Of a stretch of 64,000 nt of DNA, positions 22,228 through 27,714 are shown in pieces (position 1 is the stretch's first letter; every line of letters begins with the position of its first letter). The notes under the pieces were generated by a model. The model saw nothing but the letters and a program-made list of their open reading frames with translations, was not told the DNA's origin and ran no database searches. Location: the NCBI GenBank assembly GCA_965644295.1, contig CBFFRP010000138.1:124001-188000 (forward strand), given 5' to 3'. This DNA comes from Paraphysomonas bandaiensis. Taxonomy: Eukaryota > Protista > Chrysophyceae. The translations under genes and the position numbers were made by a program.

Positions 22228-25200
22228 ATGATCCATTGTGCGGGATTCTCATCATGTATGTATATACAGATAGATTCCCATCTTATAACTCATATATCAA
22301 ATAGGTGGAGCTTTTAAACAAGCCAAAGCTGCTTTACAAGGCATGGAGGCACTCTATCGGGATGAAATCACTGTTGAGATTATGGAATTTTCGACAAGAG
22401 ACGAATATCGCGAATGGCTCTTTGCAAACCGGGCTGTACGTACTGAATATCTTTAAATTAATCTCATAAACAAAAAGTAATATGTTTCTTATATACAGGA
22501 AATTGGTGCTCCTAATCATGAAACCTCTCCTCTAGTGTGGTCAGAGAAAGGGGTTGTTATTGGTGGTAGAGATGATACTGTTGCATGGTGCCGAGCGGCC
22601 TTTGCACCTGCCGGTGTATCACTGCCAGCCCCTGTGACCAATGTGGACTCCTGGAACCCTCAGGTATTATTTACTCATATGTAGTAATTAACTTGCATGA
22701 GTATTTCTTAAGACTTTACTTGCATTTGTGATTCGTAAATTGATCCTCCTAATATTTCTGTGTGAGATATCTTACCGTTTCTTCTCTGCAGCATGAGTAT
22801 GACTACGACCTGCTTGTGATCGGTGGTGGCTCAGGGGGACTAGCATGCGCCAAAGAAGCATTGGCTGTTAATCCTGAGCTCAGGGTAGCATTGTGTGACT
22901 TCGTGAAGCCTTCTCCAGCTGGGAGCAAATGGGGTTTAGGTATTTTGTGACTGCGTTGTTTCTATGGGCGCTCAGTGTATTGTATTTTATGTAGGTGGAA
23001 CATGTGTCAACGTTGGGTGCATCCCAAAGAAGCTAATGCACACAGCTGCTATGCTGGGAGACCTCGCCAAGGATGCCACCTTCTATGGTTGGGAGGTACG
23101 TTGTAAAGCCCAATGAACTTGCTCTATTCTCATAGTTTTCTAGGGGGGTGCCTCTGCAACGCATTCTTGGGAAACACTTAAAAACAACACTCAGGACCAC
23201 ATCAAAGGACTAAACTTTGGGTATCGTGTAGAGGTACGTGATTTGACGATTGTATGTGTGCGTGACATTGCGTTCTATATACTACCGATTACTTGCCCTA
23301 GACGGGTCAGCCAAGTATACGTTGCAGTTGCTTTTGTGGCGTACGACGCTGTAAATTAGTGCTTGTCCTGCGTATACCGAGCTCATGTGATGTGTATGCA
23401 GTTGAGAGAAAAAGGTGTATCCTACTTGAATAAATTGGCCAAATTTACTGGCCCTCACACTGTGGATGTCACTGACAAAAAGGGAACTAAGAGCGTCTCC
23501 GCTGCCCGAATAGTTGTTGCTGTGGGTGGTCGACCAACCCCTCTGCAGTGCCCTGGAGCTGAGCTGGCTATCTCCTCTGACGACATATTCATGAAGGTAC
23601 TGGAGTACAGGATAATTGTGTAGTATATGTGTGCTTGGAAACAGTGCATTGTGGTACATATGGTTATGTGATGTATTCACGCTATCTCTAGTACAACATG
23701 ATGTACATAGATCCATGCACAGAGTAATAAGCTGCAGTAGAACACGTTGTATCTAACTGTATTGCGTACCATGTATCATGTAGAACACTCCCCCGGGTAA
23801 GACTTGCGTCGTCGGAGCTGGATATGTGGCACTGGAATGTGCTGGATTTATTAAGGGTAGGAGAGATTACTTGAGTTACCTGGTTGCTGCAGTGTAGACT
23901 TGCTGTGCATTTTCTGTCACGTATTCAATGTTGTAGTGCTCTATGTCCTGTACTGTGCAGCGGTGTGCTAATGATCCTGTATATATGTCAAATGTATTCC
24001 GCTGCATAATATTATTCACTGCAATATTGTGATCATGTGTGAACAGGTTTGAGACAAGCTGATGTAACCGTTCTTGTTCGAAGCATCTTGCTCAGAGGAT
24101 TTGACAGGTGTGGGGCGTTTGTGAAGTTGTTTGCGTTGTAGTTAGTACCATAGAAGATACGCGGATGGAACCGTACATCCTCCATAGTCTGTAGTATTTT
24201 CTTACAAACCGTGATGTACAGAGAGATTGTGAGCAAAGTTCATGACGCCCTTGTTCATCACGGAGTTAATATTATTGAGGGTGTTTTACCAGAGTCCATT
24301 ACCCAGCAGCCTAATGGTAACTATCGCTGCGTCGTATCATATTCATATCGTGTAATACGAATATTTTGAACAGGACGCCTTCTTGTGAAGATGACGAATG
24401 GAATGGAAGATGAGTTTGATACCGTTTTGGCAGCTGTAGGTGTGTACATATGCTAGGGATTATACGTCGTGCGTAAACTATATATTATAGATATGTATCG
24501 TATACTTTCATGTGAATAATACATTCATTGCATGCAGGCCGCTATGCGGATACCGCTGGCCTCGATCTGGCCGCTGCTGGAGTGGAAGTCAATCCCAAGA
24601 ATGGCAAGATCCCTTGTCACAACGAACAAACATCTGTCCCCCATATATACGCTATAGGTGCGTAGGATGATATCTCGTTGCATAGAGGGGAAACTGTAGT
24701 TGTATATTTGTGTGTGTATACTCAATTGGTTCTAACGTTTTTCCAGGTGACGTTGTTGATGGTGTCCCGGAGTTGACCCCAGCTGCCATACAAGTACTGT
24801 CGTAGTCTACGTGTTGCCTCTATTCGTAATGTAATTACAGGCTGGCCAACTTCTGGCGAGACGATTATTTGGAGGTGGCAACGAGGTGCGTGTCGTATTC
24901 TCTCAACAGAATTATCACCCCCAACTATGTATATCGTAAAACACACCTTATTTCAATGAACAAATCAAACAATGCTGTCATATCTCTAGCATTAATCTGA
25001 CAACACGATTACATCGTATAACTAGAAAACAAATAGACTACGTGGTGATCATGTAGCACTTATCTGCGATTCTTTACACCTGTATGGAACTATTGTGGCA
25101 CTTTATCTGAGACTCTATATACCGATATGTATGATCTGCTATGGCTATGGCTATATATGTATGTTTAATATTGCATACGTCTAACTTTTGTTGGGTCTAT

Positions 25201-27714
25201 GATGATACAAATATTTCATCGTACTGAGTGGGTGATAATCACTCATGTCCGTGATGATCAATTTGGCACTTTATCTGAGACTCTATATACCGATATGTAT
25301 GATCTGCTATGGCTATGGCTATATATGTATGTTTAATATTGCATACGTCTAACTTTTGTTGGGTCTATGATGATACAAATATTTCATCGTACTGAGTGGG
25401 TGATAATCACTCATGTCCGTGATGATCAATTTGGCACTTTATCTGAGACTCTATATACCGATATGTATGATCTGCTATGGCTATGGCTATATATGTATGT
25501 TTAATATTGCATGCGTCTAACTTTTGTTGGGTCTATGATGCTACAAATATTTCATCGTACTGAGTGGGTGATAATCACTCATGTCCGTGATGATCAATTT
25601 GGCACTTTATCTGAGACTCTATATACCGATATGTATGATCTGCTATGGCTATGGCTATATATGTATGTTTAATATTGCATACGTCTAACTTTTGTTGGGT
25701 CTATGATGATACAAATATTTCATCGTACTGAGTGGGTGATAATCACTCATGTCCGTGATGATCAATTTGGCACTTTATCTTAGACTCTATATACCGATAT
25801 GTATGATCTGCTATGGCTATGGCTATATATGTATGTTTAATATTGCATGCGTCTAACTTTTGTTGGGTCTATGATGATACAAATATTTCATCGTACTGAG
25901 TGGGTGATAATCACTCATGTCCGTGATGATCAATTTGGCACTTTATCTGAGACTCTATATACCGATATGTATGATCTGCTATGGCTATGGCTATATATGT
26001 ATGTTTAATATTGCATACGTCTAACTTTTGTTGGGTCTATGATGATACAAATATTTCATCGTACTGAGTGGGTGATAATCACTCATGTCCGTGATGATCA
26101 ATTTGGCACTTTATCTGAGACTCTATATACCGATATGTATGATCTGCTATGGCTATGGCTATATATATGTTTAATATTGCATGCGTCTAACTTTTGTTGG
26201 GTCTATGATGATACAAATATTTCATCGTACTGAGTGGGTGATAATCACTCATGTCCGTGATGATCAATTTGGCACTTTATCTGAGACTCTATATACTGAT
26301 ATGTATGATCTGCTATGGCTATGGCTATATATGTATGTTTAATATTGCATACGTCTAACTTTTGTTGGGTCTATGATGATACAAATATTTCATCGTACTG
26401 AGTGGGTGATAATCACTCATGTCCGTGATGATCAATTTGGCACTTTATCTGAGACTCTATATACTGATATGTATGATCTGCTATGGCTATGGCTATATAT
26501 GTATGTTTAATATTGCATACGTCTAACTTTTGTTCGGTCTATGATGCTACAAATATTTCATCGTACTGAGTGGGTGATAATCACTCATGTCCGTGATGAT
26601 CAATTTGGCACTTTATCTGAGACTCTAAATACCGATATGTATGATCTGCTATGGCTATGGCTATATATGTATGTTTAATATTGCATACGTCTAACTTTTG
26701 TTGGGTCTATGATGATACAAATATTTCATCGTACTGAGTGGGTGATAATCACTCATGTCCGTGATGATCAATTTGGCACTTTATCTGAGACTCTATATAC
26801 CGATATGTATGATTTACTATGGCTATATATTCGTTGTTCTCTTTGCGTTTTTGCACTATTCTAATATTTTGTTTAGGTTATGGAGTACGAGAAGATTGCG
26901 ACTACTGTTTTTACTCCGCTGGAGTTAGGTACTGTTGGTCTCACGGAGGAAGCTGCCATTGCCAAGTAAGATTTTGTAGTTGCTCTTAGTTGAATACATA
27001 CCATTTCATGGCATTCGTGTAGGTATGGTGAGGATGCTGTAGATTGTTTCCTCTCCAGCTTTCACCCACTGGAATGGTCGGTGTGTGAAGACAACCATCA
27101 GGGTACCACCTGCATGGCCAAGGTACAGTGTTGTTTAATGGCATTTTAATTCTGTACTGTGCGGTTTGTATGTATCGTATGACTATGACAACGTCGTAAA
27201 TTTCTGAAACTTGTCTACAATTTGTTTAAATTTGCCTGCGCAGGTTGTGGTTAATACAAAGAAAGATAATGCTGTCCTTGGTATTCATATTGCTGCTCCC
27301 AATGCTGGGGAAATAATGCAAGGACTTGCAGTTGCCTTCAGAAAGGGTCTTACCCATAAGGTGGGTGTTAGTCACAAATGAAAGATGTGTTCATCTTCGG
27401 GAGTCTAAGTTCGAAGTTGTGTAATATATTATAGTCCTATGCAGTACTCAACTGACGTAAATATTATATTTGGGTGCTGTATTTGATATTTTATTGGTCA
27501 GGATCTTGTTGGCACTGTAGGAATTCACCCAACAACTGCAGAGGAATTCACCACCATGACAATCTTAAAGGTAAACTAACACAATATGTTGTACCAATGT
27601 GTATCTGTTTTGTGGTAATTCTATGGCATGATATCTACGAATTCTGTTTTGTTAACTCCACTGATATTGCAGTCATCCGGAGTGAGTACCGAAAATAAGG
27701 GTTGCTGAGGTTAA
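22228..27714 (+). CDS. TXNRD: Selenocysteine thioredoxin reductase with N-terminal glutaredoxin-like domain (TGR-like), multi-exon
   Basis: [49 protein letters not shown]. The last exon 27673-27714 ends GGT TGC TGA GGT TAA = G-C-U-G-stop (UGA at 27706-27708). Confidence 0.95.
25097..26830 (+). repeat. 168-bp tandem repeat, about 10.3 units, in the reductase intron 24886-26876
   Basis: Unit starts at 25097, 25265, 25433 and so on, with few substitutions and one 2-bp deletion. Confidence 0.97.
25193..26793 (+). ncRNA. Array of 10 box C/D snoRNA-like genes (91 nt each; starts 25193, 25361, 25529, 25697, 25865, 26033, 26199, 26367, 26535, 26703)
   Basis: GGGTC t ATGATGA (C), 18 nt, CTGA (D'), GTGATGA (C'), 17 nt, CTGA (D), GACTC. 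Terminal stem GGGUC/GACUC. Sense orientation within the intron. Confidence 0.82.

What the first reader, a model, noticed from the sequence alone, without database searches (positions are those of the whole stretch)
25193..26793. An intronic 'minisatellite' is a 10-copy tandem array of a box C/D snoRNA
Seen: each 168-bp unit contains a 91-nt module GGGTC-t-ATGATGA-[TACAAATATTTCATCGTA]-CTGA-..-GTGATGA-[TCAATTTGGCACTTTAT]-CTGA-GACTC. That is C, D', C' and D boxes in order, closed by a terminal stem, on the sense strand of a thioredoxin reductase intron. The last D box is about 88 nt from the 3' splice site. Copies 3 and 9 have box C changed (ATGATGC) and copy 4 has box D changed (CTTA), so units differ. 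Known: this is the standard layout of 2'-O-methylation guides, and intronic C/D snoRNAs often sit at about this distance from the acceptor. Inference: the D guide is complementary to TAA(A/G)GTGCCAAATTG, which resembles my recollection of the LSU rRNA segment GTTAAGGTGCC. I cannot assign the D' guide (complement ACGATGAAATATTTGT), which may be an orphan. Ten near-identical guides head-to-tail in one intron would need endonucleolytic processing between units or would amplify guide dosage. A repeat masker would hide this.
Basis: partly seen in the sequence, partly recalled or inferred. Interest (0 to 1): 0.85.

Follow-up and report, generated by a model that had tools for sequence, protein, structure and literature searches.

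The report
Ten-copy snoRNA array in one intron
One intron of a thioredoxin reductase gene in a marine protist holds ten near-identical copies of a small guide RNA predicted to methylate two adenosines of large-subunit rRNA; the array is real, but this genome keeps many guide-RNA genes as tandem arrays, so it is one more case of a local habit.

Summary
Confirmed. Ten 91-nt box C/D modules, 168 bp apart, lie sense in the 1,991-nt intron 24886-26876 of a selenocysteine thioredoxin reductase. Both guides pair perfectly with the organism's own LSU rRNA. The D guide makes 12 bp (target A at E. coli G1002 position); the D' guide makes 11 bp (target A in the L1 stalk, E. coli U2166). Joint chance is about 2e-6, so the D' guide is not an orphan. 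No Rfam family and no orthologue was found. Contigs from four studies show the unit at roughly the expected excess depth, and one shows the head-to-tail joint. Spacers contain no AG, so there are no internal exons. A decayed older copy lies upstream, and three interior copies carry box or stem changes. This fits recent unequal crossing-over under weak selection. Expression, methylation and processing were not testable. The scan noted this before: this same stretch in another window, and about 14 other snoRNA arrays in this genome. My own searches showed two arrays (U14 x57; an 18S-uridine guide x25). Verdict: new variant of a known kind (intronic polycistronic snoRNA cluster).

The parts
25096..26826 (+). 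tandem array, period 168 bp, 10.3 copies, 98% matches
   Evidence: depth excess and head-to-tail joint in public contigs
25193..25283 (+). snoRNA copy 1 (intact): box C 25199-25205, D' guide 25212-25222, D' 25224-25227, C' 25251-25257, D guide 25262-25273, D 25275-25278, 5-bp terminal stem
25361..25451 (+). copy 2 (intact)
25529..25619 (+). copy 3 (last base of box C changed A>C)
25697..25787 (+). copy 4 (box D CTTA; loses a sheared G-A pair of the kink-turn, probably inactive)
   Evidence: kink-turn anatomy PMC8162545; inactivity inferred
25865..25955 (+). copy 5 (intact)
26033..26123 (+). copy 6 (intact; followed by a 75-nt spacer)
26199..26289 (+). copy 7 (intact)
26367..26457 (+). copy 8 (intact)
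26535..26625 (+). copy 9 (box C A>C and outer stem pair broken)
26703..26793 (+). copy 10 (intact); D box 88 nt from the acceptor and 76 nt from a branch-point-like CTAAT
25284..25360 (+). 77-nt spacer (repeated between copies): no AG, CTAAC at +66, collinear with the last 83 nt of the intron
25096..25192 (+). partial copy: D guide, D box and spacer, without an intact 5' half
25008..25086 (+). decayed older copy (remnants of D' guide, C', D guide and D box in register)
   Evidence: p about 0.004
24886..26876 (+). host intron, GT-AG, 1,991 nt, phase 0
22306..27714 (+). host gene (approximate ends): thioredoxin reductase with an N-terminal extension and a Gly-Cys-TGA-Gly-stop end (selenocysteine)

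Best explanation
The 91-nt module is a real dual-guide box C/D snoRNA with no Rfam family. SHOWN: boxes, stem, and perfect complementarity of both guides to the organism's own LSU rRNA. INFERRED by the D+5 rule: it directs 2'-O-methylation of an A at RF02543 position 1184 (E. coli G1002) and an A at position 2489 (E. coli U2166, L1 stalk). INFERRED origin: the intron first held two or more adjacent copies from an older duplication of snoRNA plus downstream intron tail (decayed copies upstream; spacer collinear with the tail). Unequal crossing-over then expanded and homogenised one unit to about ten. INFERRED processing: the intron is spliced and debranched, cut in the spacers by an endonuclease, and trimmed, so several monomers come from each intron, as in plant and algal intronic clusters. 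The expansion is probably a tolerated by-product of a genome-wide tendency to amplify snoRNA genes in tandem, not an adaptation tied to thioredoxin reductase.
For: Guide-target pairing of 12 and 11 Watson-Crick pairs, each starting at -2; shuffle probabilities 5.5e-4 and 2.9e-3, joint 1.6e-6; 0 of 496 background CTGA sites reach 12 bp. The rRNA has A where the eukaryotic consensus has G, and the guide has the matching T at +5. 23 of 24 weak Rfam matches to the module are C/D models over its boxes. Variants shared by non-adjacent copies (copies 2, 4, 6; copies 3, 9; copies 7, 8) point to repeated unequal exchange. All three module changes hit boxes or stem in interior copies. Unit-to-flank depth ratios of 6.7, 9.5, 3.5 and 8.2 against 8.3 expected from the assembly, plus a head-to-tail joint in one run. 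Other snoRNA arrays found by my own searches: U14 x57 and an 18S-uridine guide x25 from a blind pick. Non-snoRNA arrays of 58-322 bp also occur.
Against: No RNA, end-mapping or methylation data. No orthologue found, so conservation and true covariation are not shown. No convincing RNase III substrate in the spacer (z = 0.1; spacer-spacer duplex not better than shuffles). The genome's single-domain RNase III-like ORF has a degenerate signature by my reading.
Confidence: 0.6

Rival explanations
1. Passenger array: only one copy per spliced intron matures (the last, at the usual distance from the branch point) and exonucleases remove the rest, so the array adds little or no guide RNA.
For: Splicing-dependent assembly favours a position about 50 nt upstream of the branch point in vertebrates (PMC8162545). 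Copy 10 is intact and the damage is confined to interior copies. No cleavage signal was found in the spacers.
Against: Polycistronic intronic clusters are processed to monomers in plants and algae (PMC7671301). The genome holds 57 U14 copies in tandem, which suggests a polycistron pathway. Three damaged copies out of ten is a small sample.
Confidence: 0.22
2. Concatemer: without internal cuts, trimming stops at copy 1 and copy 10 and leaves a stable RNA of about 1.6 kb carrying up to ten snoRNP units (sno-lncRNA-like).
For: Both terminal copies are intact. Stable multi-snoRNA forms accumulate in Ostreococcus (PMC7671301), and snoRNA-ended lncRNAs come from the SNORD116 locus (PMC8162545).
Against: No direct evidence. 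In known clusters monomers are the main product.
Confidence: 0.08
3. Selected dosage: copies are kept to raise guide output from a host gene whose transcription is too low for ribosome demand.
For: Guide sequences are identical in all ten copies. Many different snoRNAs are arrayed in this genome (earlier notes).
Against: Three of ten copies carry box or stem changes. The copies are so recent that guide identity says little. Non-snoRNA tandem arrays are also common. Depth hints at different copy numbers between samples, within noise.
Confidence: 0.2
4. Assembly artefact, or an ordinary minisatellite with chance boxes.
For: One of the four runs may be the assembly's own source; depth of collapsed contigs is not a true copy number; no long read was seen.
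Against: Four studies show excess depth and one contig crosses the head-to-tail joint. Copies differ by patterned variants. Two independent rRNA matches at about 2e-6.
Confidence: 0.03

Closest known systems
Intronic polycistronic snoRNA clusters of plants, Chlamydomonas and Ostreococcus (PMC7671301)
   Same: Several C/D guides in one intron of a protein-coding gene, needing release from one precursor; isoforms made by gene duplication.
   Different: Here ten 98-99% identical copies of one gene at a fixed 168-bp period, looking like a minisatellite. The Ostreococcus clusters described hold different, mostly single-copy snoRNAs (49 in 12 clusters).
Mammalian SNORD115/116, rat Bsr/RBII-36 and 14q32 repeated C/D snoRNAs (PMC8162545)
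   Same: Tandemly repeated, near-identical C/D snoRNA genes.
   Different: Those sit one per intron in repeated introns of non-coding hosts, and from my own knowledge most lack rRNA targets. Here all copies share one intron of a coding gene, the spacers have no AG, and both guides match rRNA.
Vertebrate SNORD102 (Gm4042, PMC5597630) and SNORD102B (adjacent nucleotide, PMC3349704)
   Same: By my own recollection of the human sequence, the D' guide pairs with the same L1-stalk segment.
   Different: The register is one base 3' of Gm4042 (memory-based alignment, not tool-checked); no Rfam match; a second guide for a different site is present.
Yeast Rnt1-processed polycistronic and intronic snoRNAs (PMC10557570)
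   Same: Precedent for endonucleolytic release between units.
   Different: No stable spacer hairpin of that kind was found here.
Other snoRNA arrays in this genome (U14 x57, 18S-uridine guide x25; earlier scan notes)
   Same: Same head-to-tail amplification of a guide gene.
   Different: Those are mostly widely conserved guides; this one has no Rfam family.

Membership tests
box C/D methylation-guide snoRNA | box C near the 5' end, box D near the 3' end, terminal stem | tested here: met
   7 of 10 copies fully canonical
box C/D methylation-guide snoRNA | internal D' and C' boxes | tested here: met
   CTGA and GTGATGA in all ten, joined by a hairpin
box C/D methylation-guide snoRNA | 10-21 nt antisense element before D or D', Watson-Crick pair at the fifth base | tested here: met
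   12 bp and 11 bp to own LSU rRNA; joint chance 1.6e-6
box C/D methylation-guide snoRNA | discrete RNA bound by fibrillarin/Nop56/Nop58/Snu13; target ribose methylated | not testable with these tools
   only assembled contigs were offered, no raw small-RNA reads
box C/D methylation-guide snoRNA | conservation in related species | tested here: inconclusive
   present in four close samples; six orthologous TrxR loci lack the intron; two metagenome scans gave no orthologue
any Rfam 15 snoRNA family (including SNORD102) | score at the gathering threshold | tested here: not met
   best 22.9 bits against 50 for snoR11, driven by the boxes
intronic polycistronic snoRNA cluster | two or more snoRNAs, sense strand, inside one intron with no exon between them | tested here: met
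   flanking exons collinear with orthologues; no AG in spacers
intronic polycistronic snoRNA cluster | endonucleolytic release of monomers | tested here: inconclusive
   no significant spacer structure; RNase III-domain genes exist; no RNA data
SNORD116-type repeated exon-intron host gene | each repeat holds its own splice acceptor, exon and donor | tested here: not met
   the only AG dinucleotides in the unit are inside the D' and D box regions

The most novel reading that the evidence does not exclude
The intron yields a multi-unit guide RNA (a stable concatemer of about 1.6 kb, or a ladder), or its units are freed by a route other than RNase III that uses the branch-point-like, AG-less signal repeated in each spacer. 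This would be part of a genome-wide, snoRNA-specific amplification strategy in this protist.
Probability: 0.1. Interest if true: 0.8.

Novelty: new variant of a known kind. Interest (0 to 1): 0.45.

Why it matters
Guide-RNA genes can hide as minisatellites and be lost to repeat masking or collapsed in short-read assemblies. This locus adds an uncatalogued dual guide and two predicted LSU methylation sites, one in the L1 stalk. It also offers a clean natural test: copy-specific variants (copies 3, 4, 9) show which units of a single-intron array are matured, and so whether tandem amplification raises guide dosage. The larger interest lies in the genome-wide pattern, not in this array alone.

Tried and rejected
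Rfam at gathering threshold: nothing; E-value mode gave only generic box matches. Metagenome scans: the dual-guide pattern gave 0 hits; the D-guide pattern gave 18 hits that look like chance, none with a module. Orthologous TrxR loci L025-L028, L035, L036 and L038 lack the intron and the guides. L034 and L039 end too early, and one promising NCBI contig came without DNA. A second exact D-guide-plus-CTGA match on C110 is a member of a dispersed repeat, not a paralogue. Spacer-spacer duplex as an RNase III site: not better than shuffles (129 of 500). Hidden exons or recursive splicing: no AG in spacers. Homology of the spacer's 3' half to the true 3' splice region is only suggestive (score 20 against 17 for other introns). 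Three of four blind guide patterns found no credible guide, so no denominator of single-copy versus arrayed snoRNAs was obtained. The P. imperforata probe PIMP 663 (PMC9303649) has 4 mismatches to this 18S by my reading, so I do not assign that species. The Chlamydomonas paper (Chen 2008) is not held. A plasmid search with 18S was uninformative and not followed. The Pfam call on exons failed on a frame slip and was not repeated. Only one repeat period was laid on reads.
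Full report
Observation. Tandem Repeats Finder reports a 168-bp period, 10.3 copies and 98% matches at 25096-26826. 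Parsing gives ten 91-nt modules from 25193 to 26793, separated by 77-nt spacers (one is 75 nt). Each module has box C, D', C' and D in order and a 5-bp terminal stem. Copies 3 and 9 change the last base of box C, copy 4 has CTTA for box D, and copy 9 also breaks the outer stem pair. The module folds far better than shuffles (z = -3.6), and the spacer does not (z = 0.1). The unit occurs nowhere else in the 62.6-Mb assembly.

Host gene. Exon-by-exon translation gives a thioredoxin reductase with an N-terminal extension, ending Gly-Cys-TGA-Gly-stop. The array lies sense in a 1,991-nt GT-AG intron, 24886-26876, phase 0. The exons on either side join without an indel against a close relative's transcript (P0035, 67-92% identical over the catalytic exons, about 53% in the N-terminal exon) and against six genomic orthologous loci that have no intron there. 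The spacers contain no AG (about 2.9 expected), so the repeats are not exon-intron modules.

Targets. I fetched the organism's own rDNA. The D guide pairs over 12 Watson-Crick pairs (positions -2 to -13) with LSU rRNA, and its fifth base faces an A at RF02543 position 1184, E. coli G1002. The eukaryotic consensus has G there, paired with C. This organism has an A-U pair in that helix, and the guide carries the matching T; against G it would make a G-U pair at the methylated base. The D' guide pairs over 11 Watson-Crick pairs with the L1 stalk, fifth base facing an A at model position 2489, E. coli U2166. Shuffled guides reach these lengths with probability 5.5e-4 and 2.9e-3 in 5,283 nt of rRNA, jointly 1.6e-6. 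Of 496 background CTGA sites, one reaches 11 bp and none 12. So the D' guide is not an orphan. The D+5 rule is from PMC8162545. By my own landmark counting (not tool-checked), the D' site is one base 3' of human Gm4042, which SNORD102 guides (PMC5597630). A vertebrate SNORD102B that shifts to an adjacent base is described (PMC3349704). No Rfam family reaches threshold.

Is the array real? Public contigs from four studies were laid on the upstream flank plus one period. The unit forms its own contig in each run, at depths 236, 831, 12 and 21 against flank depths of about 35, 88, 3.4 and 2.5. The ratios (6.7, 9.5, 3.5, 8.2) compare with 8.3 expected from the assembled array. One run has a contig that crosses the head-to-tail joint. 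Depth of collapsed contigs is only a rough guide, two runs are very shallow, and one run may be the assembly's source. Several copies are certain; exactly ten is not.

History (inferred). Upstream lie a partial copy (25096-25192) and a decayed copy with both guide remnants in register (25008-25086; 7 of 2000 shuffles). The spacer aligns end to end with the last 83 nt of the intron, with CTAAC at +66 against CTAAT at +68, ending in GG where the intron ends in AG. The 5' part of this match is certain; the 3' part is only suggestive. Variants are shared by copies 2, 4 and 6, by 3 and 9, and by 7 and 8. The simplest account is an older duplication of snoRNA plus tail, then repeated unequal crossing-over. 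All three changes inside modules hit boxes or stem, which suggests that interior copies are redundant.

Genome context. My own searches show U14 as 57 tandem copies on C434 and, from a blind pick of a conserved 18S site, a C/D guide repeated at least 25 times on C287. Earlier scan notes list about 14 further arrays in this genome and this same stretch in another window; apart from U14 I did not check them. Non-snoRNA arrays of 58 to 322 bp are also present. I could not measure enrichment. The 18S looks ochrophyte to me (own knowledge). Earlier notes say Paraphysomonas or diatom; the P. imperforata probe has four mismatches, so I leave it as a marine stramenopile.

Mechanism. Shown: anatomy, intronic position, complementarity, multi-copy state. 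Inferred: splicing, debranching, cuts in the spacers, trimming and snoRNP assembly, as in yeast, plant and algal polycistrons (PMC10557570; PMC7671301). I found no spacer structure that marks a cut site. The genome has a Dicer-sized RNase III gene and a single-domain one. Rivals are a passenger array in which only the last copy matures (D box 76 nt from the branch-like A), a stable multi-unit RNA, and selection for dosage. Copy-specific variants make these separable by small-RNA sequencing.

Comparison and verdict. It works like an ordinary dual-guide C/D snoRNA and meets every sequence-level criterion; expression and methylation were not testable. It belongs to no Rfam family, and no orthologue was found. 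The layout is an extreme, homogeneous form of the known intronic cluster and fails the test for a SNORD116-type repeated host gene. It is a new variant of a known kind, and one of many in this genome. Interest 0.45.

Noticed in passing
window 27869-27949 (+): SECIS-like hairpin (AUGA/GA core, z = -3.4, no apical AA run) in the 3' UTR of the TrxR; the TGA-Gly-stop end is conserved in a relative's transcript L065.
   Followed up: partly
G000:C287:184-7461 (-), L063: At least 25 tandem copies (period about 290 bp) of a C/D guide for the conserved 18S uridine of the snR55/SNORD33 type; the array runs to the contig start; one more copy at 12548.
   Followed up: partly
G000:C434:87990-102345 (-), L024; C413:12659-12771: 57 tandem U14 matches at about 255-bp spacing, plus one separate copy.
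   Followed up: partly
window 1922-17325: Four ORFs built of 87-bp (29-aa) ankyrin-like repeats, with multi-kb segmental duplications between them.
   Followed up: no
window 37075-38149: 58-bp x 18 tandem repeat, apparently starting at a splice donor; no snoRNA boxes seen by eye.
   Followed up: no
window 50801-56150: 28-bp x 3 repeats at both ends of a 5.3-kb stretch with 1290-aa and 326-aa ORFs, consistent with an LTR retrotransposon.
   Followed up: no
G000:C525, C543, C545, C516, C196, C68: rDNA is assembled in scattered, partly rearranged pieces (an LSU fragment lies directly upstream of an SSU gene on C525); a divergent SSU on C669 may be organellar or a contaminant.
   Followed up: no
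L059:862-2292 (-), G000:C451: 476-aa ORF with one RNase III domain of degenerate signature and a dsRBD-like part.
   Followed up: partly
L017:2041-3694; L021:1339-2332; G000:C19, C41, C66: Other homogeneous tandem repeats: 322 bp x 5 (99%), 78 bp x 13, and a 28-bp TGATGA/CTGA-rich satellite on several contigs.
   Followed up: no
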